This document shows, piece by piece, positions 3,174-62,648 of a stretch of DNA of 64,000 nucleotides. The stretch's first letter is position 1. Each line of letters opens with the position of its first letter. The notes below the pieces were generated by a model, which ran no database searches, was not told where the DNA came from, and saw only the letters and a list, made by a program, of their open reading frames with translations. The position numbers and the translations under genes are program-made. Location: positions 124,001 through 188,000 of the IMG/VR virus record IMGVR_UViG_3300049001_000044; one strand, 5' to 3'.

Positions 3174-3181
3174 ATATGTGA

Positions 3182-3499
3182 TTAGTAGGCGTAGGTATCT
3201 TCAACGCTTGCGCCAAGAGCGCAAACTTGCTTTTCATCTGACTTCCAAAGGCGTGTGCCACCTTCGTTGAAGCCAGTGGTCCACTTGCCCGCTTCGATCA
3301 GAACGTAATCACCAACGTTGAAGTCCTTGACGTCTGGACCTACAGCGAACACCTTACCCCAACGAGCGTACTGCCCTTGAGAAAGGATGTCTTGGTTGGT
3401 GAGGATGAAGCCAAACTTGCTCTTCTCGATGAATAGACCCTCAGCGGTGTCATTCACAAATTCGAACAAGAAGCTGTCATGTAGCGGATTAAGCGACAT
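3182..3499 (-). CDS. groES: GroES-like co-chaperonin
   Basis: LNPLHD...GKVFAVGPDV...VGDYVL, typical Cpn10 pattern. Confidence 0.88.
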   Translation of the reverse strand: MSLNPLHDSFLFEFVNDTAEGLFIEKSKFGFILTNQDILSQGQYARWGKVFAVGPDVKDFNVGDYVLIEAGKWTTGFNEGGTRLWKSDEKQVCALGASVEDTYAY

Positions 3500-3520
3500 T
3501 GTAACTCCTATGGGATGAAC

Positions 3521-3772
3521 TTATTCAGCGTCGACGCCGTCATCAAGAGCGGCTTCGGATTCTGCGATACCTTCCTGTGCTAGGAATAGTGCAGAGACAG
3601 CAGATGATTGTTGAGGTTGTACTTGCTTAGTGCGGATGCCATCCTTTTCATCGATGAAACGGCGGCGATCATCAACACCGACTGGTACTGGCGTGGTCGC
3701 CAGTTGCTGCTTGATTGCGAGGACGTCAAAGTCGACGAATTGGCCGCGTGCACTGCGTGCTTTTCTGCTCAT
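3521..3772 (-). CDS. Hypothetical protein (83 aa)
   Basis: Start moved to MSRKARSARG at 3772 (GGAGA RBS); late-promoter motif upstream. Confidence 0.7.
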   Translation of the reverse strand: MSRKARSARGQFVDFDVLAIKQQLATTPVPVGVDDRRRFIDEKDGIRTKQVQPQQSSAVSALFLAQEGIAESEAALDDGVDAE

Positions 3773-3837
3773 AAGTGAGTTCTCCGAAAAAGGGAATATG
3801 GGATAAATATATAGGTTGCGTTGCAACTCGACAACCG

Positions 3838-3845
3838 TATTTATC
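3838..3845 (-). promoter_or_regulatory. Late promoter motif GATAAATA
   Basis: Intergenic; resembles T4 late TATAAATA; recurs before late genes. Confidence 0.6.
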
Positions 3846-3874
3846 GCCACCCCGGCGAGACTCACTTTCAACAG

Positions 3875-4141
3875 TCAGGACAGAAGTTTCAATCCTTCTC
3901 TTTCGATCCAAAGGGCTAGATCGACGGCATTGTAGATGCGTTCGCCACTCGGAAGGATGATGACGAAGCCATGACCTGTAGGATTGAGCTTACCTCGTCC
4001 CATCTTCATCGTAGTATGTGCATCAACGTGCTCATCATACGGAATCATCTGGCTTTTCAGAAGGGCAGTGACCGCGATGTAATCGAAGTTCTCATTGCCC
4101 TCCTTCATGCTGAAGATGGTTGCTCTACGAGCGATGATCAT
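3875..4141 (-). CDS. Hypothetical protein (88 aa)
   Basis: Start moved to ATG 4141 (GGAGAGG upstream). Confidence 0.65.
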   Translation of the reverse strand: MIIARRATIFSMKEGNENFDYIAVTALLKSQMIPYDEHVDAHTTMKMGRGKLNPTGHGFVIILPSGERIYNAVDLALWIEREGLKLLS

Positions 4142-4224
4142 CGCGTCTTTCCTCTCCAAGGGCAGTTAGCAGGAGAGTGACCGTTGCCACCACATAAGGT
4201 GCACACATGGGTGTAATTAGTCAT
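4138..4224 (-). CDS. CCHC zinc-knuckle micro-protein (28 aa)
   Basis: MTNYTHVCTLCGGNGHSPANCPWRGKTR = C-x2-C-x4-H-x4-C; overlaps both neighbours. Confidence 0.6.
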   Translation of the reverse strand: MTNYTHVCTLCGGNGHSPANCPWRGKTR

Positions 4225-4729
4225 GGTAGAACTCCGATGCAGGAATTGCGTACTTAACAGGATCCACTTCGTGGACACCAATGAGGTGGAGAACAAGTGA
4301 GGCGCAAGAGGAACCCCTACCTACGCCCCACAGTTGGTTCTTGGAACGAAGAGTGTCGATGATGTAGATGAGTGTCTTGAAAATGCTGCCAAGACCGCGA
4401 GTGCGAATCTCCAGCAACTCTTCCATTGCCCTTATCACATACTTCTCACCCTTCTTATGAGCTCGATCCAAGATGTACTCATCCAAATCCATGGTCTGGT
4501 ACTTCATGGGGATATCCCATGCGAAGCTTAGCTCTTCGTTCGCCTGCTTACCTGCGTGAATCACTTCCTCAAAGTCGACCAGGTTGAACTGCTTCACGTC
4601 TTCATTCATGTGAGTGACGACGATCTGAGACGGAGAAACTCCGTGAAGCAGCAGTTCAGGCACCTTCTCAGGTTCTACTTCGTTGGCGCCGTCGAACCAC
4701 AGGGTTCGATCATTGAGGATTGTTTTCAT
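4217..4729 (-). CDS. DnaE (Pol III alpha)-like fragment, 170 aa
   Basis: WGVGRGSSCASLVLHLIGVHEVDPVKY matches the DnaE GRGS region; ends before the PDID catalytic motif. Confidence 0.8.
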   Translation of the reverse strand: MKTILNDRTLWFDGANEVEPEKVPELLLHGVSPSQIVVTHMNEDVKQFNLVDFEEVIHAGKQANEELSFAWDIPMKYQTMDLDEYILDRAHKKGEKYVIRAMEELLEIRTRGLGSIFKTLIYIIDTLRSKNQLWGVGRGSSCASLVLHLIGVHEVDPVKYAIPASEFYHD

Positions 4730-35258: not shown

Positions 35259-36827
35259 TTAGAGAATTGAGAAAGGCACAGGATCACCGCCGAAGTGGTC
35301 AAAGTTCGGTTCGGTTTCGTCTGCGTCAGGAGCCATCGTTTCGTACACGAGCTCTCTGGCCTTTTCATCGTAGTGGGAAAGGCGATGCATTAGCTTCATG
35401 ACCACTGCCATTGCCATGATGGTATCGTCAGTCGCGCCGATCTTCGCCTCATACGATCCACCTTTGGCCACGAAGTTCTTCAGTTCGAAGAGTAAGATGT
35501 CGGAGTTGATCTTCAAACCGTTGTTAATTCTCTCAACCAAGTTTTTCATCTGCATGCAGGTGACGAGCTTAGATTTACCGGTCGTGTAGGTACCGAACTT
35601 GCCTGGTGTTTCGTCGTACCGCTCTACGCCATCCAAGTAGGTACCACCGTCTGGGCTATCATCGTTTTGGATCATGGCGACTAGCGCTTCACCCACACCG
35701 TTTCGCTCAAAAGACCACACAACTTCAGCGCGCCGACGATTTTGATCTGGCTTTCTCAGCTCTTTCAACAGCCACTTGATCTTAGCATAGATGAGAGGGA
35801 TGTTGACGTTATTCAGTCTCAGCTCAGCGACTTGTTCCAAGCTTGGGAACTCCACAACCTGAATTGCAGTGAAGTCTTTTCCGTTACCTGTGGCCGGATC
35901 AACGCCGACGAGATAAGTTTTGTTTGCTCCACCGACGTCTTTCCAGAACCTGAAACCCATCTCTTCACGGATGTGCGGCTTAGCACGCATCGCATGCAGG
36001 CAACGTGAGTCAATGAGCAACGCCTCGCTAGAAAGGAATTCGCAGTCAAGTTCTTGGCGGGCCTTAACCGGACCAAGTTTGCCGATCATTTCGTCGTAGT
36101 ACTTTTGCTCCCGGTCTGGGTGCTGATACCACATCGCCCTGATAGGTTTGAAACTGTTTTGACCACTGTTTGCGCCTCGCCACAGCTGCGCGAAGAGGTC
36201 AGAGTCGCCGTTAGGGGTCGAGGTTAGAACGAACTTACCACCAGTCGATAGAGACGGTGCAAGCGATGCCCACATCTCGTCTTGAATACGACGAGATAGG
36301 AACGCGATCTCGTCAATGAAGAGGAAGGATGGCGAGCTACCACGACCTGTCTTTTCCGAAGTTGCTTCGCACTTGATCTTGGCGTTGTTGTCGAACTCGA
36401 TAGAAGTACGTGAGTAGTATTTGCAGCCTGGCTTGATCCACTCTGGCAATTCCTCATACGCAAACTTGATACGAGACATAATTTCGGTTGCGTGAGCCAT
36501 TGCTTTCGACGCAATGATGCAGAGTTTGGGTTCGTCTTTGTTGGCAAAGCAGGTGAGCCAGATAACGTACATCGCAACGACGGTGGTTTTACCCATCTGA
36601 CGTGAGGCAAGAATGATCGTGTCCTTATTGTTGTGGATGGACGTGATCATCTCTTTCTGGTACTCATAGAGGATCATTGGCACGGCGCCCTTTACAGGGT
36701 CAACGACCATGATGTAGTTTTCGATGAAGTAGATTGGGTCGCGCTGACACCGCACGAGCTCTTGGATGAGCTCAGGCGTGTACTCGTTGGTAGAGTTTGG
36801 GCGCTTAATCGCTGGATTAGCGGGCAT
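35259..36827 (-). CDS. terL: Terminase large subunit (T4 gp17-like)
   Basis: ASRQMGKTT, GRG, FIDEIAF, TSTPNG, GVDPATG..DF, FERNGVG, DDTIMA. Confidence 0.96.
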   Translation of the reverse strand: MPANPAIKRPNSTNEYTPELIQELVRCQRDPIYFIENYIMVVDPVKGAVPMILYEYQKEMITSIHNNKDTIILASRQMGKTTVVAMYVIWLTCFANKDEPKLCIIASKAMAHATEIMSRIKFAYEELPEWIKPGCKYYSRTSIEFDNNAKIKCEATSEKTGRGSSPSFLFIDEIAFLSRRIQDEMWASLAPSLSTGGKFVLTSTPNGDSDLFAQLWRGANSGQNSFKPIRAMWYQHPDREQKYYDEMIGKLGPVKARQELDCEFLSSEALLIDSRCLHAMRAKPHIREEMGFRFWKDVGGANKTYLVGVDPATGNGKDFTAIQVVEFPSLEQVAELRLNNVNIPLIYAKIKWLLKELRKPDQNRRRAEVVWSFERNGVGEALVAMIQNDDSPDGGTYLDGVERYDETPGKFGTYTTGKSKLVTCMQMKNLVERINNGLKINSDILLFELKNFVAKGGSYEAKIGATDDTIMAMAVVMKLMHRLSHYDEKARELVYETMAPDADETEPNFDHFGGDPVPFSIL

Positions 36828-51579: not shown

Positions 51580-53438
51580 ATTGTTTTCTTCCCAATGCTT
51601 TGCTTGGTGGAGGAGTTTAGAATCTGATGCATGGTCGGTTTAGCCGAAGTGTACTCAGTGCGACGATCTTGCTCAATGAAGATCCAACGGTTCTTCACAG
51701 CGCTGAAGCGGTGCAGTCGTGGAGCAATCTTCGTATCAGTTGGATAGTAGAGACGGAAGTATTCACCATCCTTCGACTTCGTTGGGTCAGGGAGTTGGTA
51801 GCCTTCGACGTACGGTTCACCATTCTTTGGTAGACCATCTTCGACATAGGTAGGCGCCCTTGCTTTCATCTTCACTGGCGCTGGTTGACCCTTCGCGTTT
51901 CCAGTAGGAACAGGCGGAGTCATGTGCACCATTTCAATGCTCAGTCCATCATCTGATCCGCGTTCAGGAACCGCTTTCGCTGCCGCCTTCATCGTCTCTT
52001 CGGTTACTTCCAACACAGACTCATCAATGTGACCAGCACCATCAGCAAGGATCGTGTCAGCGGTGAGATACTTCTGAGTGTCGAACGTGCCGAAGATGTC
52101 TCTCGTTTCTTGCGACGGGATTGCCTCTTGAGCTTGGAAGCGGTAGAGCACTGGCTTCCATCCAGTTGTGTAGCCAACAGACGCCCATCCAGTGTCGGTA
52201 ACTTCCAAGAACTTCTTCACAGGACGAAGGTTATGATCGTACTGCATTTCAGGAATGACCTCGATGATGTCACCGGTAACGATAGGGCGACCCATCAGTT
52301 GGACCATCACGGCATATGATACAGTGAACGAGTACTGATCGAGAATGTTCAGACCGAATTTTGACAGATCGGAGATACTGTCGTTCGTGCTATACTGCGC
52401 CTTGATTCGCAGTGGCTGCTTCGCGTAGTCACGGTCCCTGTTCTCTTGGAAGAACAAGTCTTGCACGTTATTGATGTCAGTTGGTGGGCTATCAAGAATG
52501 TCCAGCTCAAGCACTTCCCAGCTATCGGTTCCAGTGAACATCGTTGGTACGACACGAATCGCTTTCACCAACAACTCCGTCTGTAAATTCATCGTGACAG
52601 GAGATACAGACTGGACTAGGTTGAACACGCCCACTCGCTTCCAAACGTAGTTGATTGGGAAGCTAAACATGTCGCCTGTCATAAAGTCCACACCGCCACC
52701 AATCAACGTGAAGTTGACGATTGTGGAGACAAACTGTGAATTTACCGTTGCGACGCCAAGTTGCTTCATAGCACCCACGACCGGCTTCCACATAACTTGG
52801 AAGGACGTTGAGTTGATTGCCACGAGCGTCACTACGCCTGCGACCGGGTTCTGTCCTATTGCTGTTGGTGTGAGCGTGCCATTGCCAAGACCACTGAAAG
52901 TAACCTCACCAAATTCTACCTTACCATCTGCGATCTCAACTCTAACTTGCTTCGCAAAATTGAAGGCAGTGTTACCTTGCTTGATGACGACGGCGCCCAC
53001 CTTTACCCAGTTAGGTTTTGCAGGGCTATTTTCTGGCTCGTTGCCAGGCCGAGCAGTGACGATACCAAAGTCAACACCTACATAGGCTTTTCCTGCTACG
53101 TCACTACCTGCTTGGAAGCTTCGCCATGCACCGTTGTTGATGTTGGAAATTGGGAAGCCAGGTGCTGGGGTCGATGACATCAGCGTGCCTTTAGACAGCA
53201 CACTACCATCACCTTGCTCATGCACACCTAGCAGCTTGTAGATGTTGAGTGGGGCACCATTGATGTTGAGATTCTCTGCAGCGTAGGACTCCTGCAGCGC
53301 TGTTTCATTGCGAGCGCAGAGGTCTTCCTCACCAGAGATTTCCCACTCGCCCATACAAGGATTAGTGGGAACGTACGAAGGTGTATCGTCGTGTTGGGTG
53401 TTTAGGCTACCAGCCGCGTCTTCGCAAGGGTAAGTCAT
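51576..53438 (-). CDS. Neck protein (gp14-like) with large inserted domains
   Basis: N-terminal AENLNINGAPLNIYKLLG; DLFFQENRDRDY, LSKFGL, GDII, FLEVTD. Confidence 0.6.
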   Translation of the reverse strand: MTYPCEDAAGSLNTQHDDTPSYVPTNPCMGEWEISGEEDLCARNETALQESYAAENLNINGAPLNIYKLLGVHEQGDGSVLSKGTLMSSTPAPGFPISNINNGAWRSFQAGSDVAGKAYVGVDFGIVTARPGNEPENSPAKPNWVKVGAVVIKQGNTAFNFAKQVRVEIADGKVEFGEVTFSGLGNGTLTPTAIGQNPVAGVVTLVAINSTSFQVMWKPVVGAMKQLGVATVNSQFVSTIVNFTLIGGGVDFMTGDMFSFPINYVWKRVGVFNLVQSVSPVTMNLQTELLVKAIRVVPTMFTGTDSWEVLELDILDSPPTDINNVQDLFFQENRDRDYAKQPLRIKAQYSTNDSISDLSKFGLNILDQYSFTVSYAVMVQLMGRPIVTGDIIEVIPEMQYDHNLRPVKKFLEVTDTGWASVGYTTGWKPVLYRFQAQEAIPSQETRDIFGTFDTQKYLTADTILADGAGHIDESVLEVTEETMKAAAKAVPERGSDDGLSIEMVHMTPPVPTGNAKGQPAPVKMKARAPTYVEDGLPKNGEPYVEGYQLPDPTKSKDGEYFRLYYPTDTKIAPRLHRFSAVKNRWIFIEQDRRTEYTSAKPTMHQILNSSTKQSIGKKTI

Positions 53439-54277
53439 TTGTATTGCTCTAGGAATTCTTTGAATACGTCTTCACGAATGAAGAGCGCTTTACCTTCTAT
53501 CCAAGCTTCAACGCCTGGCTTCTCAGGGACGGTTGCTTTTGCAGCGATTGCCGTCGTGAGGTTATTTATCGAAGGATCAAGACAGTACTCCAGCAATTCT
53601 TCAAAGTTCGAAAACCCTTTCTTCGCCATCGTGCGAACTGCTGCTTCAATTGACACCACGTCCTGGTGACTGATTTTGACCTTGCCCGCATCGGCCTTCT
53701 CGACTAAGTCGTAAAGCATCTTCATCGTCCATCCACGAAGAGTGCCACGAATTGCTTCAGCGTCGGTGTCAGGGACGATTCCACGGTTAATCAGCTTCAT
53801 CAAGCTCATTAGGAGGCCATTGAGGGAGTTTAGTCCTGGCAAGCCAATCGATTCCTCCAGCACTGGGAATGATTTCCAGATATCGTGCGAGTTGCACTTA
53901 CCAACCTTCGCGTCATCAGCTGGGATCACGTAGAAGATGTCGCCATATCCAGACGCAATGCGATCGGTCGACGCACAAATGTAGGCGCTCTCACGGCTAG
54001 GATATGCTTCCCATTTCTTAGAAGTGGCGATGAACTTCGTGTAGTAGTTGTGAGTGTTCTTACTCACACGTTTGAAGGAGGTGGAGTCACCCAATTGGTA
54101 CTCGCCCTTGGTGCCGTCGACACCGCGCACCAAGTTTAGCTTACCATCTTTTACCCTCTTCATAACCTTAGACGCATTCGCTTTAACCCACTCCACTGCC
54201 TCATTGTAGCTGACAGCTTTTGATGATGGGACTTTTGGAAGAGCAACCTCTTCCATGATGTAGTCTTTAAACCGCAT
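53435..54277 (-). CDS. ART-like protein, subfamily A, tandem copy 6
   Basis: MRFKDYIME; LVRG...YPSRESAYICAS...YG...IPADD...VEAWIEG. Confidence 0.68.
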   Translation of the reverse strand: MRFKDYIMEEVALPKVPSSKAVSYNEAVEWVKANASKVMKRVKDGKLNLVRGVDGTKGEYQLGDSTSFKRVSKNTHNYYTKFIATSKKWEAYPSRESAYICASTDRIASGYGDIFYVIPADDAKVGKCNSHDIWKSFPVLEESIGLPGLNSLNGLLMSLMKLINRGIVPDTDAEAIRGTLRGWTMKMLYDLVEKADAGKVKISHQDVVSIEAAVRTMAKKGFSNFEELLEYCLDPSINNLTTAIAAKATVPEKPGVEAWIEGKALFIREDVFKEFLEQYK

Positions 54278-55109
54278 AGAGTTCTTCTTTCAATTGGTTG
54301 ATTAGTTTATGGGTGTGCGAACCCATGCGATCACTTTCGATGCGGATAAACACGCACTCACCGCGAATCCAAATTTCTCTAGCCTCGTTCACGCCACCGT
54401 AATCACTCGCATCAGTGTGTAAAAACTTGTTCAGGGTAGGGTCGAAAATTCGTTCGAAGAAGGCCTGAAGATCAGAGTCCTTCTTACCCCTCATGTTAAC
54501 GATGACGGCGCGAATCGTGTCTGCTTCATAATCCTGCAAAGTTCCTACCATTTCCCGTAACATGTCGGCAGTAATTTCGCTTAGCTCATTCCTGAACTGG
54601 TCAATGTTGTCAGGGTCCAGCTTGTACTTGTGGTTGGAGAGCAGTCTCACCCATCCAAAGAACTGGTTCAGATCACCAATGTCAGGGAACCCAGTGCCGC
54701 GAAGACCCTCTCTAAAGCTGTACCAGAAATCACCGTCAGGACAAATACCCATGTGTGCGTTGTCGGATGGAATGACGAGGAAGGCCTTACCATACTGCCA
54801 CGCAGTCTGCTCAAACGATGAGCAGATCCATGCTTGATCGCGACGGGGATAATCGCTCCAACGTGGTGATGAAGAGACGAGAGCGTTCGTCTCATTCGAA
54901 GTGAAGGCGGCCTTACGTTTGAACTTGCTGCTGTCGCCGACAGCATAGTCCTGTTGCAGTGGCATGCCACGGAAGATTGCGACGTCAGGATTATCGAATA
55001 GGGCGTTAGTGTACCACTTCGAGTTCTTCCTAATCCAATCGTACGCTTCCTCTTTCGAGATGGCGGTGGATTGAGGTCCACCCTCAGCAAGGTATGCTTT
55101 GAATCTCAC
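54267..55109 (-). CDS. ART-like protein, subfamily A, tandem copy 5
   Basis: MRFKAYLAE; IFRG...YPRRDQAWICSS...YG...DFW...REIWIRG. Confidence 0.68.
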   Translation of the reverse strand: MRFKAYLAEGGPQSTAISKEEAYDWIRKNSKWYTNALFDNPDVAIFRGMPLQQDYAVGDSSKFKRKAAFTSNETNALVSSSPRWSDYPRRDQAWICSSFEQTAWQYGKAFLVIPSDNAHMGICPDGDFWYSFREGLRGTGFPDIGDLNQFFGWVRLLSNHKYKLDPDNIDQFRNELSEITADMLREMVGTLQDYEADTIRAVIVNMRGKKDSDLQAFFERIFDPTLNKFLHTDASDYGGVNEAREIWIRGECVFIRIESDRMGSHTHKLINQLKEELYAV

Positions 55110-55969
55110 AGCTCCAACTCCTTACGCAGGAATTCGATGATGTCGCGATCGCTGTTGCCAGTGACCTTGATGAACGCGGCTTTACCGTTGATCCATACTT
55201 CTCGTCTGCTGTCGACGCCACGATAGTCTTCGCCCTTTGTGTGGATGAATCCATTTGCATTTGGATCGAGTGCTTTTTCCAACCATTCGTCCATGTTGTC
55301 AGCGTGCATTTTCTTCATCGACTCTACAAGAGGTCTAACAATGCGAATGTCTTGCATCGACTCCTTCAACTCTTGCTCGTTATACTTGCTGAGCGAGTGA
55401 CGAAGCTTTGTAGGATTATTCTCTGGCATCGGAGTGGAAGGGGTGTTGAGCTTGTCAATGAATCGATTAACGTCATCGACGTCAAAGAAGCCAGACCCTT
55501 TCAAACCTACCTTGTCAAAGCATGCCCAGAAGTCATACGATGGACAGACACCGATTCGTGCTGTGTCCGCAGGAATGACAAAGTACAGACTACCTTCTGC
55601 ATCAGGATCCTTTGAACTATACCCACGAAATGCATAGAGGTCTGCGCCCGACAGGGAGGTGGAGCAGATGTACGCGCTCTCACGTGGTGGGAACGACTGC
55701 CATTCAGGATAGGTTGGGATGAGCGAGTGAATGTGATTGCTGGTGTTTGCGGCTCTCCTTCTGAAGAGGCGTGAATCACCGATAGCAAAGTCATCAAAGG
55801 AATCACGCATGCCGCGATAGATTCGATTGTTGGTTTTGCTATCATCCAAAATGCTGTGGATTCCTTCCGCTGCATTCTTTTGAATCCAATCTACTATCTC
55901 TGCTGCGTGAGACGTAACGGTGAATGGCTTACGGTATTCTTGCTCTTGTAGGTATGACTTAAACCGCAT
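55106..55969 (-). CDS. ART-like protein, subfamily A, tandem copy 4
   Basis: MRFKSYLQE; IYRG...FPPRESAYICST...DFW...REVWING. Confidence 0.68.
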   Translation of the reverse strand: MRFKSYLQEQEYRKPFTVTSHAAEIVDWIQKNAAEGIHSILDDSKTNNRIYRGMRDSFDDFAIGDSRLFRRRAANTSNHIHSLIPTYPEWQSFPPRESAYICSTSLSGADLYAFRGYSSKDPDAEGSLYFVIPADTARIGVCPSYDFWACFDKVGLKGSGFFDVDDVNRFIDKLNTPSTPMPENNPTKLRHSLSKYNEQELKESMQDIRIVRPLVESMKKMHADNMDEWLEKALDPNANGFIHTKGEDYRGVDSRREVWINGKAAFIKVTGNSDRDIIEFLRKELEL

Positions 55970-56792
55970 CTTTCAAAGTCCTGATAATTTTTTCGATGTT
56001 GTGACCGTCGACCTTGATGAATGCGGCTCTACCTGCAACCCACACTTCACGATCACCAGTACGTTTGTGATAATTAGACGCCGTGGTCTGTGAGAACTTA
56101 TTTAGCTCGGGGCCAAGGACGATCTCAAGCAGGTCGTCCATGTTATCGACATCCAGATTATTCATCGCATCAACGACGGCAGTGTGGTAGACTTTCTTCA
56201 TCACATCCTTCGTCCATGATCGAAGCACATCATGCAGCTTCTCTGAATCGGTCTCAGGAAGATGGACATTCAGAGTTTCAGCGGTGGTGGTGAGGAAGGT
56301 GTTCAGGTCTGCAACGTCATTGATGTTCCAAAGGTCAGCATGAGCTAGACCTCTTTCGAACGATGGCCAGAAGTCATCACGTGGGCAGATGCCGATGTGG
56401 GCGTTATCTGCTGGGATGACTAGGAATGGATCGTAGCGTGATGAGTATTTAGCAGCAGTGTGCAAGTTGTCGGCGCAGATGTATGCGCTCTCACGACTAG
56501 GATAGTTCTTCCATCGTGGCGAAGTGGCAATGAATGAGTTGACGAAGTTTTTGGTGTTAGCCGACTTCCTCTTGAACATAGCCGAGTTACCCACTGCATA
56601 TTGAGTATCAGACGGCACGCCTCTCACGATGTAGTTGTCAGCACTTAACACATTCGTGATGTAGTGGGAGGCATGACGCTTGCACCACTCCCTAAATGGG
56701 CCGATAGGGATAGGAGCGATGACTGGTTTGTCGCTCATCCCGGCTCCTAGCACGTGGAAGTCCGACTCATTAATGAATTGCTTAAAGCGCAT
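55959..56792 (-). CDS. ART-like protein, subfamily A, tandem copy 3
   Basis: MRFKQFINE; IVRG...YPSRESAYICAD...DFW...REVWVAG. Confidence 0.68.
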   Translation of the reverse strand: MRFKQFINESDFHVLGAGMSDKPVIAPIPIGPFREWCKRHASHYITNVLSADNYIVRGVPSDTQYAVGNSAMFKRKSANTKNFVNSFIATSPRWKNYPSRESAYICADNLHTAAKYSSRYDPFLVIPADNAHIGICPRDDFWPSFERGLAHADLWNINDVADLNTFLTTTAETLNVHLPETDSEKLHDVLRSWTKDVMKKVYHTAVVDAMNNLDVDNMDDLLEIVLGPELNKFSQTTASNYHKRTGDREVWVAGRAAFIKVDGHNIEKIIRTLKDAV

Positions 56793-57687
56793 TCAGCCAC
56801 TCCCTTACTTTTTTCTCTGCTGATTCGTAATCATATTCGTCGACAAATTCACTGATCGAGATGAACGCACATGTGCCGCCAATCCATACTTCATGATCAC
56901 CTTCCACATGGAAGGTCTCGCCCTTAGTGTGAGTGAAACCAGAAGCGGCTGGATCCAGTAGGCCTTCTAAGAACGTTAGCATGGACTCACGATAGTCCAT
57001 CTTCTCGGCGATCATCTTAATCCTTCTACTGTACTCGTTATGGAAGTCGACATGAATCTTGTCCGACATGTCATGAAAGTCTTTGTTAGTATCAGGGTGA
57101 TCACCAATCATGTCTTCCAAGTCTTCACGCCAAATGCTTCTCAAAATCCTGGTAAGTTCTGCGTAGTCAGTGCTGTTGTCAATTGGTTCACCAAATCGTT
57201 GGCATATGGCGCTCAAGACTTCGTTCATCATCTCAACACCGCCACCTTTGAACATTTTATCGAACTCTTTGAAGCCGCACCAGAAGTCGAAAGCTGGAAC
57301 AACGCCAATTCCCGCATCGTCAGCAGGAATTACCAGGTAGGGGTCACCAAAGTTGTTCGCGTTATCTAGGTCAGTAGTGCATATGTAGGCGCTCTCACGC
57401 TTAGGATAGTCTTTCCATTTAGAAGAGCGGGAAACCAACAAGTTGATGAAGTTGGAAGTGTTTGCCGCCTTTCGAACGAATTTGCTCGTATCGCCTAGAC
57501 CGTATGGGTGATCTTCCCTACCCATTGAAAGACCACGCCAAATAATTGGACCACCACGAAGCAGACCAGCAACATGCGCCTTGCTATGCTGCTTAATCCA
57601 CTCAACCACTTCTTCCTTTGATGTTGGAGAAGCATGCGGGTAGCTGTACTTCTCCTCTTGTTCCTTTAGGTAATCTTTGAATCTCAT
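56782..57687 (-). CDS. ART-like protein, subfamily A, tandem copy 2
   Basis: MRFKDYLKE; IWRG...YPKRESAYICTT...FG...DFW...HEVWIGG. Confidence 0.68.
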   Translation of the reverse strand: MRFKDYLKEQEEKYSYPHASPTSKEEVVEWIKQHSKAHVAGLLRGGPIIWRGLSMGREDHPYGLGDTSKFVRKAANTSNFINLLVSRSSKWKDYPKRESAYICTTDLDNANNFGDPYLVIPADDAGIGVVPAFDFWCGFKEFDKMFKGGGVEMMNEVLSAICQRFGEPIDNSTDYAELTRILRSIWREDLEDMIGDHPDTNKDFHDMSDKIHVDFHNEYSRRIKMIAEKMDYRESMLTFLEGLLDPAASGFTHTKGETFHVEGDHEVWIGGTCAFISISEFVDEYDYESAEKKVREWLNAL

Positions 57688-58589
57688 TCTAACTCTTCTA
57701 CCCAGTCAAGTGGGTTATCGGCGTGGCCGATAACTGCTACCTCACCATGCACCCACACCTCATGGTCTCCATGAATGTCGAACTCTCTTCCATTTAAGAC
57801 TTGGAATTTGTTCGTGTATGGATCCATCGACTTGGACAGCCATTCATACAGGCTGTCTCCCATGTTCGGGCTCTGCAGGATGGTTTCACGGATGATTTTC
57901 GCCCAACGCTGGTTGTAATCGCGGGTGTGGTCAGGATGGTCGTTGTCGAACCCTTCCAACTGATTTACGAAATCGTGAAGCTTCTCGGTGGTCACATCGC
58001 TCAACACCCTTCTCATCTCGTCAAAGGTCATCTTCTGCTCATCTAACTTCAGATTCATTTCTTCTTTGATGAACTCCAGCATCGTGTTGATGGAGTCGAC
58101 GTTCTTGTGTCTGCGCTTTAGGAACGAAAAGCTGTCCCAAAAATCTGACTCAGTGCAGATTCCGATTTGCGCGCTGTCGGCAGGAATGATTAGTGCAAGG
58201 TCACCATACTGTTCCGCCTTGTGCTCGTTCGTCGTGCAGATGTATGAAGACGAACGAGGTGGGAACCGCTTCCATGCTGCGTCATTGCTCACCAACAAGT
58301 TGATGTAATTGGCAGTATAGGCTGCACGACGCTTGAGCGATCTCGAATCACCAATCAAGTACGGTGCCTCTGCCGTGAATCCACGATAGATCGGTGATGC
58401 GCTGCCATCCTTCAGCTTCTGAATGTAGCGAGAGGCGTTCTTCTTAATCCACTCCTTAACCTCATGCTCTTCGACCCGCCGCATGTTTTGAAAGTTTGGG
58501 GTGGAGATCGTCTCCTCATCGTCGTCCCATGGAAAAGTCGGTTCACCGTTGTTTCGATATTGCTCTTTGATGTAGTCTTTGAATCTCAT
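57684..58589 (-). CDS. ART-like protein, subfamily A, tandem copy 1
   Basis: MRFKDYIKE; IYRG...FPPRSSSYICTT...YG...DFW...HEVWVHG. Confidence 0.68.
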   Translation of the reverse strand: MRFKDYIKEQYRNNGEPTFPWDDDEETISTPNFQNMRRVEEHEVKEWIKKNASRYIQKLKDGSASPIYRGFTAEAPYLIGDSRSLKRRAAYTANYINLLVSNDAAWKRFPPRSSSYICTTNEHKAEQYGDLALIIPADSAQIGICTESDFWDSFSFLKRRHKNVDSINTMLEFIKEEMNLKLDEQKMTFDEMRRVLSDVTTEKLHDFVNQLEGFDNDHPDHTRDYNQRWAKIIRETILQSPNMGDSLYEWLSKSMDPYTNKFQVLNGREFDIHGDHEVWVHGEVAVIGHADNPLDWVEELE

Positions 58590-58591
58590 TT

Positions 58592-60445
58592 TTAACCGAT
58601 GAAGAATGCTGTGTTGCCGAAGTTGACGCCACCGTTACCAGCTTCGTAGTCAGTGATTTGACGAAGCAGCTCAGCGAAGTCTTGGTTCGCTTCTGAGATA
58701 AGCATGTCGCCGTTCAACGTCAATCCGCCGTTAGGACCTGCAACAGAGCCGTATTTAGAGCGGATCATACCCAACGTGTACTTCAGTTCGGCTTCAGCCC
58801 AGCCTTGAATCCACTGCTTAGCCCAACGGTCATTGATCAACTCTTGTTCAGTTCTTTCAATCACGACTTCCAACACCACACGTTCAGATCTGGTTTGAAT
58901 GTCGCGATATAGAGTGAGCTGTCGAGAGGCTTCATCCCAAGTGTACATGATGTTGCCAGCGAAAATCTTCTCAAACATCTCAGCCATCTGCGACACAAGG
59001 TGGATGGAAACCAAGTCGATGTTTTGGCCGTTGTAGAACTGCTCAATGAATGGCTGCGAGTAGATGTTAGAACCACCGAATGCGTTCATCGAGGACTGTG
59101 AAACACGGTGAATCTTCAGTATGTTGACGATCTTGTCAGTGCCTAGGCGCGGATCATTGAGGTAGTAGGTGGACTGATTGTTCTTCACCGTGAAGAGAAT
59201 GTGGCGATGCTGATACGCGTTGTCAGCACGACGACGGAACTCGTCAAGAGCATTATCGATTGCGACGTTGAACTGTTCTTCAGCCAACTCAATGCAGATC
59301 TTTGGCCAACCCATCTGGTTCTTCAGAGTCTTGATGAGGCGCAGGCGCTCATCATAGCTACCGTCGGTGCCAATACCGATCTTGTCAGACGTTGCAGAGC
59401 CTTCGCTGTCAGTATCAGCCTTGTTCCATTTGTCACCATCCCATACCAGCAAATCTCTACCCACGGTCTGATAGAAGAAGTCGCCAATAGTTGGAGGAGC
59501 AGGAGGTTGGTAGTCGCAAACTGTATCGCCGGTAATTGCGGTGGTCCACTCACCCGGGCCTGTCTGGAATTGGAAGAGATTGCCAGTGAATGGCAGCCAC
59601 TGCCCCAATGTGAAGACGTACATCTGAGGGGTTGGCATTGCACCAAGCGGGTCTTGCCCCATGTTGTAAGAGATGTCGCCTGGTTGCGCATCGCTTGGGG
59701 TCTCACGAAGGAACCTACCAAGAGGTACGTAACCTGAACCGAACTTAACACGGGTATTCGATGCATTGCAGTCCACCCACATACCACCTACGAAGAAGAC
59801 AAGCTTGTTGTATGTGATGTCGTAGAAGATATGATTTGGTCCGACAGGTGGCGCCGTACCAACAGGAACAGTATCAGTCGAAGTCTCAAGCCAAGTGCTA
59901 GTAGCGGCGTTCCACACCAGCACTTTGTTCGAGGCATGGTCATAGTACGCTTGACCATTCGATGGGTTGCTTGGAGGAATAGACTGAGCTGGGATAGAGC
60001 CGGCGTAAGTGTCAACACTGCGCTCATTCACCGTGGTTTCGATCGCGTAGGATTGAACGCCAATGGTGAAGTACTGCAGGATGTTGGATGCGGCATGGAT
60101 GGACGCGTAGTAGACCTTGTTAGGATCCACATTCGAGACGTCAACGGACACGATGGTTAGATCATCGTTGAAGTATCCATACGAAGCGGCGATTACTTGA
60201 GCAGTGCCGATCTTGTCAGCAGGTGCTGCGAAATTGGTAGATGGCGTGTAGCGCTTGCCATCCTCTGGGTATTCATCACCAGAGAATCTGCTTTCTGAAA
60301 GCAGGACGACTGCGCCGTCAATCACATCAGAGATTGGATAGGTCCAAGTAACTCTCAGCGAGTTGTTTGGGATTTGCTGGACTTTGACGGTCATCTTGCG
60401 ACCGTCAATCCATAGATCATGAGCGTTGTTTTGGAGGTCAGACAT
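58592..60445 (-). CDS. Neck protein (gp13-like) with long N-terminal extension
   Basis: C-terminal QMGWPKICIELAEEQFNVAIDNAL...WIQGWAEAELK..LG.IRSKY...GGLTLNG. Confidence 0.8.
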   Translation of the reverse strand: MSDLQNNAHDLWIDGRKMTVKVQQIPNNSLRVTWTYPISDVIDGAVVLLSESRFSGDEYPEDGKRYTPSTNFAAPADKIGTAQVIAASYGYFNDDLTIVSVDVSNVDPNKVYYASIHAASNILQYFTIGVQSYAIETTVNERSVDTYAGSIPAQSIPPSNPSNGQAYYDHASNKVLVWNAATSTWLETSTDTVPVGTAPPVGPNHIFYDITYNKLVFFVGGMWVDCNASNTRVKFGSGYVPLGRFLRETPSDAQPGDISYNMGQDPLGAMPTPQMYVFTLGQWLPFTGNLFQFQTGPGEWTTAITGDTVCDYQPPAPPTIGDFFYQTVGRDLLVWDGDKWNKADTDSEGSATSDKIGIGTDGSYDERLRLIKTLKNQMGWPKICIELAEEQFNVAIDNALDEFRRRADNAYQHRHILFTVKNNQSTYYLNDPRLGTDKIVNILKIHRVSQSSMNAFGGSNIYSQPFIEQFYNGQNIDLVSIHLVSQMAEMFEKIFAGNIMYTWDEASRQLTLYRDIQTRSERVVLEVVIERTEQELINDRWAKQWIQGWAEAELKYTLGMIRSKYGSVAGPNGGLTLNGDMLISEANQDFAELLRQITDYEAGNGGVNFGNTAFFIG

Positions 60446-60475: not shown

Positions 60476-60483
60476 TATTTATC
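60476..60483 (-). promoter_or_regulatory. Late promoter motif GATAAATA
   Basis: Upstream of the gp13 / ART / gp14 / gp15 operon. Confidence 0.65.
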
Positions 60484-61321
60484 GATCGCTGGGGTAACCG
60501 TTAGCCTTCCATTCTCTTATGTAGTCAAGCACTTTAATTTTTGGTTCCCAACCACTGGGACGCAGGAACTGATTGGCGCAGGTATAGGGAGGATCGCCTG
60601 GCCTAGCGGCACGATATTCGATGTCAAGTGAGGTGTCACGTTGGAACTCTTCAACGATCTCTTTCACCGTGACTGATGCTTCACCACTGCCAAGTTCGTA
60701 AAGATTCCAACCAGGACGAAGCGCCATGTGGTCCATCACCTGAACGAGTCCTTCACAGACATCATCAACGTGCGTATAGTCTCTAATGATCGAACCATCG
60801 CCTTCGATGAAGAAGCCGCGACACGTTGTCAATCCTATCTTGCACTGCTTGACGAGGGTAGTGTAGGAGTAGGCGAACGCTTCACCAGGCCCATACACGT
60901 TGAAAAGACGAACTGAGCATGCGTGAACCTTGTAGGTGTCACGGTATAAGTCCACAAGTTGCTCACCCATTGCTTTCGACAACGCATACGGATTGCGAGC
61001 GAGATTTGCGAACTTAGCAGACGACGATGAGATGAAGATCAGCTTCGTAGTTGGATTCTTACGACAGTACTCCAGCACCTTCGTCAGCGATGTGATGTTG
61101 TTCTCAATGCTACCCGCTGGATCAACAAGTGAGATGCCGAGTCGTGGGGTTGCGGCAAGATGGAAGATGAAGTCCAACTCACCAAACTGGCCCAAGTCTG
61201 TGTCTTGCACCAACTGACCATCAACCTTGTCAATGATGAAGACGTCTTCAGTAATTTCCGAAAGATGGTTAACGAGGCGTGTGCCGATGAAGCCACGCCC
61301 ACCAGTGACTAGGATTCTCAT
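60479..61321 (-). CDS. NAD-dependent epimerase/dehydratase (extended SDR)
   Basis: Start moved to MRILVTGGRGFIG; FHLAA, ISSSS, YALSK, RLFNVYGP, RDYTHVDD. Confidence 0.92.
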   Translation of the reverse strand: MRILVTGGRGFIGTRLVNHLSEITEDVFIIDKVDGQLVQDTDLGQFGELDFIFHLAATPRLGISLVDPAGSIENNITSLTKVLEYCRKNPTTKLIFISSSSAKFANLARNPYALSKAMGEQLVDLYRDTYKVHACSVRLFNVYGPGEAFAYSYTTLVKQCKIGLTTCRGFFIEGDGSIIRDYTHVDDVCEGLVQVMDHMALRPGWNLYELGSGEASVTVKEIVEEFQRDTSLDIEYRAARPGDPPYTCANQFLRPSGWEPKIKVLDYIREWKANGYPSDR

Positions 61322-61782
61322 GAAAATATTACCGTCCCACGTGTTGCAGCAGTGCATGGCAAGATGCCTGCTAGGGTGTCATCGCTAGGCGTGCCATCAA
61401 AACAGAGTGTGGAGATGGAGTGACCTTTACCTGCGTTTGGCCCGCTCAGGAACTTGACTAGACTTCCATCACTGAACTCATACCTTTCTTTCGTCCTACT
61501 ACGAAGGAGTCCGATGTAGAGATCGGAAGGTAGGCTGTCCAGCATCTTACCAAATTCTGCAGCGCGTTCACGCCGGCTTTGAACATTGGTCGATACTACG
61601 AGATGGGTGCGAAGAGGTTGGAAGATTGCTTGCCACAGAATGTAGGCGAGGGATTGCTCCACGCCTGCTTCATTCTGTTCACCTTGCTTGATAGTAGGTG
61701 GTGTGATGCCTAGTTGGGATTCGCAGAAGTACTCAAACGAATCTCTGCAATGGATGAGGGTGAGGAGTTGGGATGGTGACAT
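61318..61782 (-). CDS. Degenerate terminase-ATPase-like protein (154 aa)
   Basis: Colinear with TerL N-domain (CRDSFEYFCE, YILW, YEFSDGS, GKG.S, LCFDG) but no Walker A and no Walker B Glu. Confidence 0.6.
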   Translation of the reverse strand: MSPSQLLTLIHCRDSFEYFCESQLGITPPTIKQGEQNEAGVEQSLAYILWQAIFQPLRTHLVVSTNVQSRRERAAEFGKMLDSLPSDLYIGLLRSRTKERYEFSDGSLVKFLSGPNAGKGHSISTLCFDGTPSDDTLAGILPCTAATRGTVIFS

Positions 61783-61824: not shown

Positions 61825-62052
61825 ATGATCAAGGTTCGTGCACGTGCTTGGCCGCACATGTTCAAAGCGGGAGAAACGGTCGAGGCAGTGATTAAGAAGG
61901 TCAACTGCCACGACGTTATGGGAGAGGAGTTGGCGGAGCTTCTACAGAAGTACCACGAAATCAATGGGAGTCATGTTCCAAGGGCGGCAACACAAGCGTT
62001 AATTCCTGTGTTGGTCCGCCATCAGACGAAGGTGTTTGGCAAGAAGCGTTAA
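61825..62052 (+). CDS. Hypothetical protein (75 aa)
   Basis: Fills the gap between minus genes; AGGA RBS; late-type motif upstream. Confidence 0.6.
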   Translation: MIKVRARAWPHMFKAGETVEAVIKKVNCHDVMGEELAELLQKYHEINGSHVPRAATQALIPVLVRHQTKVFGKKR

Positions 62053-62474
62053 TTGCCTGGCATCAGGGTGATGAGGCCAGAGATTTCACGGTCTTCCTTC
62101 ACCACATTCGGTGCTGGCCAGCTCGACTTGGTTTTGGCTTCCTTCGCCGCATGCTTGATGCGGGCTTTTTCCGCCTTCTCGCGGTCCTTCAATGAACCGA
62201 AGACTGCACGGAAACGGTAGGAGATTTTCAGCACGTCGTCATCGACGGACTCCAACGTGTAGTAGATGTTCTCGAGGGCGTAAAGGGTGGGGTCTTGCGC
62301 CTTGGTTACGCCATGGAATTGTGCGATGATGTTATGGATCTTCTGAAGATCCGGGCCTTTGGCCGACATGACGTTCGCTGCGAGATTTGCGAGATTCGAA
62401 ATGCCCAGCTCCATGTCTTCCCACTTGCTGCCGAGTTTAACTTGGAAGGATTGGCGTTCGATAACTGCAGTCAT
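62049..62474 (-). CDS. Hypothetical protein (141 aa)
   Basis: ORF track; AGGAG RBS; AGTTT promoter upstream. Confidence 0.72.
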   Translation of the reverse strand: MTAVIERQSFQVKLGSKWEDMELGISNLANLAANVMSAKGPDLQKIHNIIAQFHGVTKAQDPTLYALENIYYTLESVDDDVLKISYRFRAVFGSLKDREKAEKARIKHAAKEAKTKSSWPAPNVVKEDREISGLITLMPGN

Positions 62475-62510
62475 ACTTGCTCCTTAGAGGATGTGTCAAC
62501 GTGATGAGTA

Positions 62511-62541
62511 ATTATACGTCATTGTGAGGAGCTGAAAAACT
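62511..62541 (-). promoter_or_regulatory. Phage promoter AGTTT-N20-TATAAT
   Basis: Exact motif copy. Confidence 0.72.
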
Positions 62542-62569
62542 AGCTGTCTACAATACGACACAGACATAT

Positions 62570-62648
62570 TCTGAGACTTACTAGAGGGGCCCAGTGATGA
62601 CAAAAGAGCTTCGATGCTATTACTAACATCGAAGCTCTAGAGGTGCTC
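62570..62648. repeat. Dispersed intergenic element copy 4 (degenerate) around a terminator
   Basis: 62570-62594 matches 7863-7887 at 21/25 positions; AGAGGTGCTC at 62639-62648; 12-bp hairpin 62605-62638. Confidence 0.7.

What the first reader, a model, noticed from the sequence alone, without database searches (positions are those of the whole stretch)
61318..61782. Catalytically dead mini-paralogue of the terminase ATPase domain
Seen: aligns by eye with TerL of this window (CRDSFEYFCE vs CQRDPIYFIE; AYILW vs MYVIW; YEFSDGS vs IEFDNNA; GKGHS vs GRGSS; LCFDG vs LFIDE; GTVIFS vs GKFVLTS), but Walker A is deleted, the Walker B Glu is lost and there is no nuclease domain. Inference: a packaging regulator, or a decoy for defences that sense terminase (Avs-type sensors are known to recognise TerL).
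Basis: partly seen in the sequence, partly recalled or inferred. Interest (0 to 1): 0.6.

Follow-up and report, generated by a model that had tools for sequence, protein, structure and literature searches.

The report
Conserved dead mini-copy of terminase ATPase
A soil jumbo phage carries a small, well-conserved gene that is a stripped-down, enzymatically dead copy of the ATPase core of its DNA-packaging enzyme; it belongs to a little-studied lineage of "truncated terminase" genes in giant phages whose job is still unknown.

Summary
The ORF at 61318..61782 (-) encodes 154 aa homologous to the ATPase core of the large terminase (TerL). Evidence: hhalign 98.5%, E 3e-15, and an AF2 model (pLDDT 94) that superposes on T4 gp17 residues 102-285 at Z 15.3, rmsd 2.3 A. 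The adenine-binding Q-motif and P-loop are deleted, the Walker B Glu is Gly, and the protein stops at the C-motif. There is no lid subdomain and no nuclease domain.

It is not a decaying fragment. Five metagenomic homologues of 152-166 aa (24-73% identity) form one clade. They keep the same gene order: 141-aa gene, mini, epimerase (4-bp overlap), T4 gp13-like neck gene. In the closest pair pN is 0.18 against a saturated pS of 0.77.

It is not a recent copy of this window's TerL. It groups with 190-265-aa TerL-like proteins that sit directly upstream of TerL in jumbo phages. These are the "truncated terminase" already noted in Rak2-like phages. All 21 paralogues lack the catalytic Glu, and all keep a basic residue at the presumed trans-finger position.

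Function was not tested. My best guess (about 0.4) is a non-catalytic accessory of the packaging motor. The decoy idea is disfavoured. I rate it a new variant of a known, uncharacterised kind, of moderate interest.

The parts
61318..61782 (-). Mini-TerL gene, 154 aa: a non-catalytic paralogue of the TerL ATPase core, equivalent to T4 gp17 residues 102-285.
   Evidence: ORF; PHROG TerL hit; hhalign; AF2 model; Foldseek and VIA-align; purifying selection.
61720..61749 (-). Residues 12-21 (CRDSFEYFCE): the N-terminal helix motif shared with TerL (C-x-x-D-P-x-Y-F).
   Evidence: Alignments; F19 is nearly invariant in the family.
61660..61704 (-). Residues 27-41: the site where the Q-motif and beta1 segment (about 25 aa) is missing and the P-loop is obliterated (QNEAGVE in place of RQMGKTT).
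   Evidence: Alignments. In the AF2 model strand 36-38 runs almost directly into helix 41-54.
61621..61647 (-). Residues 46-54 (AYILWQAIF): the helix that follows the former P-loop and the best-conserved block. Y47 and W50 are nearly invariant.
61420..61434 (-). Residues 117-121 (AGKGH): the G-R/K-G loop before the Walker B strand, at the presumed trans-acting finger position. G120 is invariant. A basic residue is kept in all 21 paralogues.
   Evidence: table. The position 'between alpha2 and beta3', as for P74-26 R139, comes from PMC5727402. Mapping it onto this protein is my inference.
61393..61407 (-). Residues 126-130 (LCFDG): the Walker B vestige. The Asp is kept and the catalytic Glu is replaced by Gly.
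   Evidence: none of the 21 paralogues has D-E here, against all 12 TerLs.
61318..61321 (-). ATGA overlap between the stop of the mini gene and the start of the epimerase gene, which implies translational coupling.
   Evidence: Sequence. The same 4-bp overlap occurs in L009, L011, L012, L024 and L025.
60479..61321 (-). NAD-dependent nucleotide-sugar epimerase gene, the downstream neighbour. It starts at the MRILVTGG methionine.
   Evidence: Pfam Epimerase, E 1e-36; phrog_540.
58592..60445 (-). T4 gp13-like neck (head-tail adaptor) protein, 617 aa, the conserved downstream anchor of the module.
   Evidence: phrog_211 'adaptor Ad2'. The orthologue in L024 carries PF26809 Phage_T4_gp13. Identity to orthologues is 66-72%.
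62049..62474 (-). 141-aa protein of unknown function, the conserved upstream neighbour of the mini gene.
   Evidence: Orthologues lie directly upstream of the mini in L010, L011 and L024. No Pfam, PHROG or Atlas hit.
35259..36827 (-). The genome's full-length TerL (522 aa), with intact Q-motif, Walker A (GKTT), Walker B (DE), C-motif and nuclease domain. It lies 24.5 kb from the mini gene.
   Evidence: Pfam Terminase_6N, E 5e-15; 43% identity to Ralstonia phage RsoM2USA TerL; motifs.

Best explanation
Shown: the gene encodes a conserved, folded pseudo-enzyme. It is the RecA-like core of a T4-type TerL ATPase with the nucleotide-binding and catalytic elements removed. It belongs to an old paralogue lineage of jumbo phages, the 'truncated terminase' lineage.

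Inferred: it acts as a non-catalytic accessory or regulatory subunit of the DNA-packaging motor. It would dock on TerL through the ATPase-ATPase ring interface. It keeps the one family-wide conserved functional element, the G-R/K-G loop at the presumed trans-finger position. It cannot bind or hydrolyse ATP itself, and it cannot accept a neighbour in the normal way. It could therefore tune TerL ATPase or nuclease activity or ring assembly. In phages with no detectable T4 gp16-type small terminase, it may cover part of that role.

My confidence in the identity is about 0.95. My confidence in this mechanism is about 0.4.
For: Identity.

Not a pseudogene:
- A homologue with 73% aa identity and identical length has pN 0.18 against a saturated pS of 0.77 (pN/pS 0.24, bootstrap 0.17-0.32).
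- Six proteins of 152-166 aa form a 100/100-supported clade.
- The gene order is conserved.

Link to packaging:
- The 190-265-aa relatives sit immediately upstream of TerL, often overlapping it, in the slot that T4 gives to TerS. Examples are Xoo-sp13 gp242, XaC1_353, Serratia BF gp272, P0016, P0021 and P0019.
- The mini clade groups with such forms in the tree (82/90).
- The window's genome has the mini as its only TerL paralogue.
- The genome has no PF11053 (gp16) match.
- RaK2 is reported to lack T4 gene 16 (PMC3622015).

Motif pattern:
- The catalytic Glu is lost in all 21 paralogues and kept in all 12 TerLs.
- The basic residue of the G-R-G loop is kept in all 21 paralogues.
- In P74-26 the finger R139, at the equivalent fold position, is needed for hydrolysis and for subunit contacts (10.1101/080440; PMC5727402).
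Against: - The mini gene is 24.5 kb from TerL, in a neck-gene block, not beside TerL.
- It lacks the lid subdomain, which also contributes to TerL ring contacts in P74-26 (R235; 10.1101/080440).
- The finger residue is Lys rather than Arg in this copy.
- The finger position has not been verified experimentally for T4-type TerLs (PMC5727402).
- A divergent small terminase could exist undetected, because only PF11053 was searched genome-wide.
- The closest cultured relative by TerL, RsoM2USA, has no paralogue at all, so the function is dispensable in some lineages.
- No interaction evidence was obtained.
Confidence: 0.4

Rival explanations
1. It is a neck or head-completion factor. On this reading the TerL-core fold has been re-used for a post-packaging step, for example handing the filled head from terminase to the gp13-like neck protein, independently of TerL activity.
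For: The synteny is strictly conserved: 141-aa gene, mini, (epimerase), gp13-like gene, then an array of about 280-aa paralogues. It holds from 73% down to 24-28% identity. A promoter-like site and a terminator-like hairpin bracket the start of this block.
Against: The parts of TerL implicated in portal contact (N-subdomain II or the C-terminal arm, from the literature; PMC5727402 for the arm) are absent. Gene order in phage structural modules is a weak indicator of function. No interaction data exist.
Confidence: 0.2
2. It is an anti-defence decoy or sponge for host sensors that recognise TerL (Avs1-3, Upx).
For: It has a TerL-like fold. One of the top structural matches is the PhiV-1 terminase in the Avs3 complex. 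Its protein sequence changes 2-5 times faster than flanking genes against L010 and L024 (dN 0.67-0.95 against 0.13-0.57), as expected for arms-race genes. Upx is modelled to bind an unfolded ATPase core by beta-augmentation (PMC13601566).
Against: Avs3 reads active-site residues, bound ATP and the nuclease domain. Avs2 reads the ATP-loaded ATPase domain with a bridging ATP (PMC13601566). The mini has no P-loop and no nuclease domain. Target binding activates these sensors, so a mimic would have to bind without triggering oligomerisation. The gene lies in a structural gene block. The faster rate could equally reflect relaxed constraint.
Confidence: 0.1
3. It is a partner or chaperone of the adjacent nucleotide-sugar epimerase, for example a scaffold for virion or DNA glycosylation.
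For: A 4-bp ATGA overlap with the epimerase gene occurs in the window and in L009, L011, L012, L024 and L025.
Against: L010 keeps the mini directly upstream of the gp13-like gene with no epimerase. The rates of the two genes are uncoupled: against L009 the mini is 73% identical and the epimerase 59%. There is no precedent that I know of.
Confidence: 0.1
4. It is a neutrally decaying remnant of a TerL duplication with no function.
For: All catalytic motifs are lost, and the protein evolves fast relative to its neighbours.
Against: The reading frame stays open and the length stays at 152-166 aa across homologues of 24-73% identity. In the closest pair pN/pS is 0.24 with synonymous sites saturated. 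The fold is predicted confidently (pLDDT 94). Conserved core residues and conserved synteny also argue against decay.
Confidence: 0.02

Closest known systems
'Truncated large terminase' / 'terminase-like protein' of Rak2-like and other jumbo phages (CBB_274, Serratia BF gp272, Erwinia Eneladusvirus phages, Xoo-sp13 gp242, XaC1_353)
   Same: Both derive from the TerL ATPase domain only and have no nuclease domain. Both have lost the catalytic Glu and kept the G-R/K-G loop. They are related in sequence (BLASTP 3e-9 to 9e-8 in a small set; phmmer 1e-7 to 1e-4 in the big library). They group together in the tree. The feature is noted in PMC5259590 and PMC7760394. Function is unknown for both.
   Different: The known forms are 190-265 aa. 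They keep the Q-motif segment and an R-Q-x-G-x-T/S P-loop vestige, extend past the C-motif position, and lie directly upstream of TerL. The window's protein is 154 aa, has that segment and the P-loop deleted, stops at the C-motif, and lies 24.5 kb from TerL, upstream of an epimerase and a gp13-like neck gene.
T4 gp17 (TerL) ATPase N-subdomain I (PDB 2o0h, 2o0j, 3cpe)
   Same: Same fold and topology over the whole mini: Z 15.3, rmsd 2.3 A, 153 residues on gp17 102-285. The family profile matches gp17 at E 1.6e-29.
   Different: There is no adenine-binding motif, Walker A, catalytic Glu, C-motif, subdomain II (lid) or nuclease domain. It cannot be an ATPase or a nuclease. No Pfam terminase model is matched.
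Inactive subunits of ring ATPases that still complete a neighbour's active site, such as the delta-prime subunit of the E. coli clamp loader (analogy from general knowledge, not tested here)
   Same: Both are paralogues of the active subunit that have lost nucleotide binding yet keep the trans-acting basic residue and the fold needed to sit next to an active subunit.
   Different: This is a mechanistic analogy only. The ATPase clade differs (AAA+ against the TerL/ASCE type). No heteromeric terminase ring has been demonstrated for any phage.
Small terminase TerS (T4 gp16, PF11053)
   Same: The size is similar (about 150-165 aa). The long-form relatives occupy the TerS gene slot, and one is annotated 'terminase small subunit' in Xoo-sp13. 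No gp16-type gene was found in this genome.
   Different: The fold and sequence are unrelated, and there is no evidence of DNA recognition or of the oligomeric TerS architecture.

Membership tests
Large terminase ATPase domain (T4 gp17 type, Pfam Terminase_6N) | RecA-like ASCE fold of TerL N-subdomain I | tested here: met
   AF2 pLDDT 94.2. The top 15 Foldseek hits are all TerL. VIA-align Z 15.3 against gp17. hhalign 98.5%.
Large terminase ATPase domain (T4 gp17 type, Pfam Terminase_6N) | Passes the curated Pfam family threshold | tested here: not met
   No Pfam hit even at E 10. Only PHROG 5989 matched, at E 3.5e-6.
Large terminase ATPase domain (T4 gp17 type, Pfam Terminase_6N) | Adenine-binding Q-motif and Walker A P-loop (R-Q-x-G-K-T/S) | tested here: not met
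   The segment is deleted and EQNEAGVE stands at the Walker A columns. The loop is about 2 residues long in the model.
Large terminase ATPase domain (T4 gp17 type, Pfam Terminase_6N) | Walker B Asp followed by the catalytic Glu | tested here: not met
   The sequence is CFDG. The Glu is absent in all 21 paralogues and present in all 12 TerLs.
Large terminase ATPase domain (T4 gp17 type, Pfam Terminase_6N) | C-motif (coupling motif), lid subdomain and C-terminal RNase H-like nuclease | tested here: not met
   The protein ends at the residue aligned to gp17 285 and to TerL column 202.
Truncated terminase-like paralogues of jumbo phages (CBB_274 type) | TerL ATPase-domain homologue without a nuclease domain, encoded in addition to a full TerL | tested here: met
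   The full TerL is at 35259..36827.
Truncated terminase-like paralogues of jumbo phages (CBB_274 type) | Groups phylogenetically with these paralogues rather than with the TerLs | tested here: inconclusive
   The mini clade joins P0006, P0019, P0011 and P0017 at 82/90, apart from the jumbo-phage TerL cluster (91/71). Branches are long and the deep nodes are unresolved.
Truncated terminase-like paralogues of jumbo phages (CBB_274 type) | Gene lies immediately upstream of TerL | tested here: not met
   The mini is 24.5 kb from TerL. All six mini-type loci place it upstream of an epimerase or gp13-like gene. Long forms are adjacent to TerL.
Truncated terminase-like paralogues of jumbo phages (CBB_274 type) | Length about 190-265 aa with the Q-motif segment and P-loop vestige retained | tested here: not met
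   The protein is 154 aa with that segment deleted.
Small terminase (T4 gp16, PF11053) | Sequence match to the family model | tested here: not met
   No PF11053 match anywhere in the 343-kb genome. The mini has a TerL fold.
TerL mimic or decoy for Avs-type sensors (hypothetical class) | Presents the features read by the sensors: ATP-loaded active site and, for Avs3, the nuclease domain | tested here: not met
   The P-loop and nuclease domain are absent. The recognition features are taken from PMC13601566.
TerL mimic or decoy for Avs-type sensors (hypothetical class) | Binds or neutralises a host sensor | not testable with these tools
   This needs co-expression toxicity or protection assays.

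The most novel reading that the evidence does not exclude
A large group of jumbo phages without a T4-type small terminase may run a heteromeric packaging motor. In it, a TerL-derived, catalytically dead subunit (the long form beside TerL, or the mini form in this phage's clade) docks on TerL, contributes its conserved basic finger to TerL's ATP site, and takes over the regulatory role of TerS.
Probability: 0.2. Interest if true: 0.75.

Novelty: new variant of a known kind. Interest (0 to 1): 0.45.

Why it matters
Terminase motors are described as homomeric TerL rings regulated by an unrelated small subunit. Here there is a conserved family of dead TerL-core paralogues. In many jumbo phages they sit in the small-terminase slot. 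In this clade the paralogue is shrunk to a bare 154-aa core and moved into the neck module. This suggests an unstudied component of packaging or head completion in giant phages.

The motif pattern gives a concrete hypothesis that can be tested with cultured phages carrying the long form (Serratia BF, CBB, Xoo-sp13): catalytic Glu always lost, basic finger always kept. The finding also matters for annotation. These proteins are currently labelled variously as large terminase, small terminase or hypothetical. They can also confuse TerL-based phylogenies.

Tried and rejected
- Pfam scan of the mini: nothing, even at E 10.
- phmmer of the mini against PDB: only chance hits.
- Profile of the six mini-type proteins alone against PDB: nothing. 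The link to TerL needs PHROGs, the long-form intermediates, hhalign or structure.
- phmmer of the mini against all ORFs of its own genome: no TerL hit.
- BLASTP against its own TerL: E 0.087.
- Single-sequence AF2: pLDDT 39.8, unusable. It was repeated with a 24-row alignment.
- Word-index search: only one homologue. That is why I used the costly exhaustive search.
- IMG/VR scans with the protein and with the mini profile: no further mini-type loci, only full TerLs.
- Complex prediction of TerL 1-300 + ATP + mini: after five refusals by a busy machine it returned 'no answer' (score 0.00, controls not run). This is neither support for binding nor evidence against it.
- Proper dN/dS: not obtainable, because synonymous sites are saturated in every available pair.
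- Atlas search for the 141-aa neighbour: nothing.
- RNA evidence: the only run holding the stretch is the soil metagenome that is probably its source, with no RNA run.
- By-eye idea that the 75-aa divergent ORF is LysM-like: not supported by Pfam.
- Idea that the mini is an exon or fragment of a split TerL, as in Atu_ph07 gp110/gp109 or intein-bearing TerLs (P0012; P0018, whose sequence after Walker B reads like an intein start by eye): rejected. The window's TerL is complete and the mini forms its own conserved clade.
Full report
**Setting**

The window is bases 124001-188000 of a 343,229-bp viral record with direct terminal repeats. The only sequencing run that holds the stretch is a soil metagenome, probably its source.

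Its TerL lies at 35259..36827 (-) and is 522 aa. It matches Pfam Terminase_6N at E 5e-15. It is most similar to TerL of jumbo myoviruses: Ralstonia RsoM2USA (43%), Agrobacterium Atu_ph07, Xanthomonas XacN1 and Xoo-sp13, and Pseudomonas PA5oct-like phages. This is therefore a jumbo phage of that broad T4-related assemblage.

**The observation**

The ORF at 61318..61782 (-) encodes 154 aa. Its TGA overlaps the ATG of the next gene in an ATGA. That next gene is an NAD-dependent nucleotide-sugar epimerase (Pfam E 1e-36).

They fall in the same alignment columns in MAFFT and hhalign.

Taken alone, the pairwise similarity to the window's own TerL is not significant: BLASTP E 0.087, and phmmer finds no hit. 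Homology is nevertheless firmly established by other evidence:
- PHROG 5989 'terminase large subunit', E 3.5e-6.
- Single-sequence phmmer against 1.8 billion representatives reaches a genuine intein-containing TerL (P0012) at E 6.7e-5.
- tblastn and phmmer hits to TerLs of Xanthomonas jumbo phages.
- hhalign of the mini subfamily against a TerL alignment gives 98.5% probability and E 3.1e-15, covering mini residues 1-150 and TerL residues 15-198.
- A profile of the wider paralogue family hits T4 gp17 at E 1.6e-29.
- With a 24-row alignment, AF2 gives pLDDT 94.2 and pTM 0.90.
- The best Foldseek matches are all TerL ATPase domains: T4 gp17 at E 3.5e-8 and TMq 0.74-0.78, then P74-26, PhiV-1, T7, HK97 and Sf6.
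- VIA-align places 153 of 154 residues on gp17 102-285 with Z 15.3 and rmsd 2.3 A.

**Anatomy**

What is kept:
- The N-terminal helix motif (C-R-D-x-F-x-Y-F).
- The helix after the P-loop (AYILWQAIF; Y47 and W50 nearly invariant).
- Strand beta2, helix alpha2 and the beta-hairpin (YEFSDGSLVKF).
- The G-R/K-G loop (AGKGH; G120 invariant).
- The Walker B strand with its Asp, and the following helix and strand.

What is missing:
- About 25 residues carrying the adenine-binding Y-Q motif and the strand before the P-loop.
- The P-loop itself. EQNEAGVE stands at the SRQMGKTT columns, and the model leaves about two residues between strand and helix.
- The catalytic Glu (FIDE has become CFDG).
- Everything from the C-motif onward. 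The protein ends at the residue aligned to gp17 285, where T4's C-motif begins.
- Hence also the lid subdomain (subdomain II) and the nuclease domain.

The protein cannot bind or hydrolyse ATP in the TerL manner.

**It is a gene, not a remnant**

The word-index search found one homologue of 154 aa with 73% identity. The exhaustive search added P0003, P0004, P0005 and P0009, of 152-166 aa and 24-41% identity. These six proteins form a 100/100-supported clade.

For the window against L009, pN is 0.18 while pS is 0.77 (saturated). The ratio pN/pS is 0.24, with a bootstrap interval of 0.17-0.32.

Gene order is conserved down to about 24-28% identity. The order is: Zn-ribbon protein, 139-146-aa protein, mini, epimerase (4-bp overlap), 617-620-aa T4 gp13-like neck protein, then an array of about 280-aa paralogues. 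L010 lacks the epimerase but keeps the mini directly before the gp13-like gene.

Over deeper comparisons the mini changes 2-5 times faster at the protein level than its neighbours. Against L010, dN is 0.67 for the mini and 0.13-0.22 for the flanking genes. Against L024, dN is 0.95 for the mini and 0.26-0.57 for the flanking genes. Against L009 the mini is more conserved than the epimerase, which suggests mosaicism. A true dN/dS cannot be given because dS is saturated in every pair.

**Where it comes from**

The next-best relatives in the exhaustive search are proteins of 190-265 aa. Wherever context is available, their genes lie immediately upstream of a full TerL, often overlapping it. Metagenomic examples are P0016, P0021 and P0019. 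Among cultured phages the same holds for Xoo-sp13 gp242 (annotated 'terminase small subunit'), XaC1_353 and Serratia BF gp272.

[quoted passage not shown] It is also noted for Eneladusvirus Erwinia phages (PMC7760394). I found no functional study in the searched library.

In a tree of the shared region, the mini clade joins four such forms at 82/90 support. The jumbo-phage TerLs, including the window's, cluster apart. Deep nodes are unresolved and branches are long. The mini is thus not a recent duplicate of this window's TerL. It is a shortened, relocated branch of an older paralogue lineage.

The window's genome holds no long form. RsoM2USA and PA5oct hold no paralogue, and XacN1 shows none by the profile. 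Atu_ph07 has a possible distal one.

**Family-wide motif pattern**

- All 12 TerLs have D-E at Walker B. None of the 21 paralogues does.
- G-K-S/T is present in 9 of 12 TerLs. Three environmental TerLs use R-Q-x-G-x-S/T-T without the Lys, so loss of the Lys alone does not prove inactivity.
- G-K-S/T is present in only 1 of 15 long forms and in none of the 6 minis.
- The basic residue of the G-R-G loop is kept in all 21 paralogues (15 Arg, 5 Lys, 1 His).

This loop lies between alpha2 and the Walker B strand. In P74-26 TerL that is the position of the experimentally confirmed trans-acting arginine finger R139, and T4 also has an Arg there (PMC5727402). R139 is needed for hydrolysis and for subunit contacts (10.1101/080440). 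Mapping this onto the present family is my inference, and the position is unverified for T4-type enzymes.

**How it most likely works**

Shown: a stable TerL-core fold is conserved under selection, it is catalytically incompetent, and its lineage is genomically tied to TerL in many phages.

Inferred: it is a non-catalytic partner of the packaging motor that contacts TerL through the ring interface. It could donate or mimic the trans finger, and so modulate ATPase or nuclease activity or ring assembly. It may cover the regulatory role of the small terminase. No gp16-type small terminase is detectable in this genome, and T4 gene 16 is reported missing from RaK2 (PMC3622015). The clamp-loader delta-prime subunit is a mechanistic analogy drawn from general knowledge.

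I put this at about 0.4. The main counter-arguments are:
- The mini's location in the neck module, 24.5 kb from TerL.
- The absence of the lid subdomain.
- Lys instead of Arg at the finger position in this copy.
- The absence of any paralogue in RsoM2USA.
- The lack of interaction data. The one complex prediction gave no verdict.

Rivals:
- A neck or head-completion role suggested by synteny (0.2).
- An anti-defence decoy (0.1). The fast evolution and TerL-like fold favour it. However, Avs2 and Avs3 read the ATP-loaded site, Avs3 also reads the nuclease domain (PMC13601566), and the mini lacks these. Binding also normally activates such sensors.
- An epimerase partner (0.1). The translational coupling favours it, but the gene persists without the epimerase in L010.
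- Neutral decay (0.02), effectively refuted.

**Novelty and verdict**

The class (TerL-derived truncated paralogues in jumbo phages) is already recorded, though only as an annotation remark. The present protein is a distinct variant. It is a 152-166-aa subfamily with the nucleotide-binding segment excised. It is cut at the C-motif and relocated next to the gp13-like neck gene. It is known so far only from this genome and a handful of metagenomic contigs.

As far as I could find in the searched library, the family-wide signature (Glu always lost, finger always kept) has not been pointed out before. It makes the function testable.

Interest is moderate (0.45). The most exciting reading, a heteromeric terminase motor or TerS replacement, is unproven.

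- The exhaustive protein search was used because the word search left one relative only and the family scans left the protein open.
- Proteins known only from annotated GenBank loci were kept out of jobs that forbid them.

Noticed in passing
window 61825..62052 (+): A 75-aa ORF on the opposite strand lies between the 141-aa gene and the mini gene and is transcribed divergently from the mini. It is conserved in L024/L025 (51% identity, tblastn E 2.5e-20) and L012 (44%), and absent from L010 and L011. It looked LysM-like by eye, but Pfam gives no support. Its function is unknown.
   Followed up: partly
window 53435..58589 (-): Six tandem paralogous genes of 277-301 aa (phrog_12810 / phrog_11975, unknown function) lie directly downstream of the gp13-like neck gene. 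The same array, with three copies visible, is present in L024.
   Followed up: partly
L018 (Agrobacterium phage Atu_ph07, NC_042013.1) 2501-4692; record 440052-440372: TerL of Atu_ph07 is annotated as two consecutive ORFs (gp110 of 123 aa and gp109 of 602 aa) that together cover the window's TerL. A third, distal TerL-N-like ORF of 247 aa matches the paralogue profile weakly (E 4e-4).
   Followed up: no
L003 2037-2732 (Xoo-sp13 gp242); L002 2821-3540 (XaC1_353); L020 1507-2217 (Serratia BF gp272): The same paralogue family is annotated inconsistently in GenBank as 'terminase small subunit', 'large terminase protein' and 'terminase DNA packaging enzyme large subunit'. All three lack the catalytic Glu.
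   Followed up: yes
P0012, P0022, P0024 (environmental full-length TerLs): These TerLs keep Walker B D-E and the C-motif, but their Walker A reads R-Q-x-G-x-S/T-T without the canonical Lys. Lys loss alone is therefore not a safe marker of an inactive terminase in this group. P0012 also carries a LAGLIDADG intein after Walker B.
   Followed up: partly
window 62505..62640 (-): A strong terminator-like hairpin (15-bp stem, 62638-62605) is followed by a promoter-like site (62538-62511). Both lie upstream of the 141-aa gene. This suggests that the block from the 141-aa gene through the mini, epimerase and gp13-like gene starts a transcription unit. The evidence is consensus matches only.
   Followed up: no
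window 60479..61321 (-) versus L009, L011, L024: The epimerase is about 59-61% identical to all three orthologues, whereas the mini ranges from 28% to 73% and gp13 from 66% to 72%. The rates are uncoupled, which suggests recombination or mosaicism within this module.
   Followed up: partly
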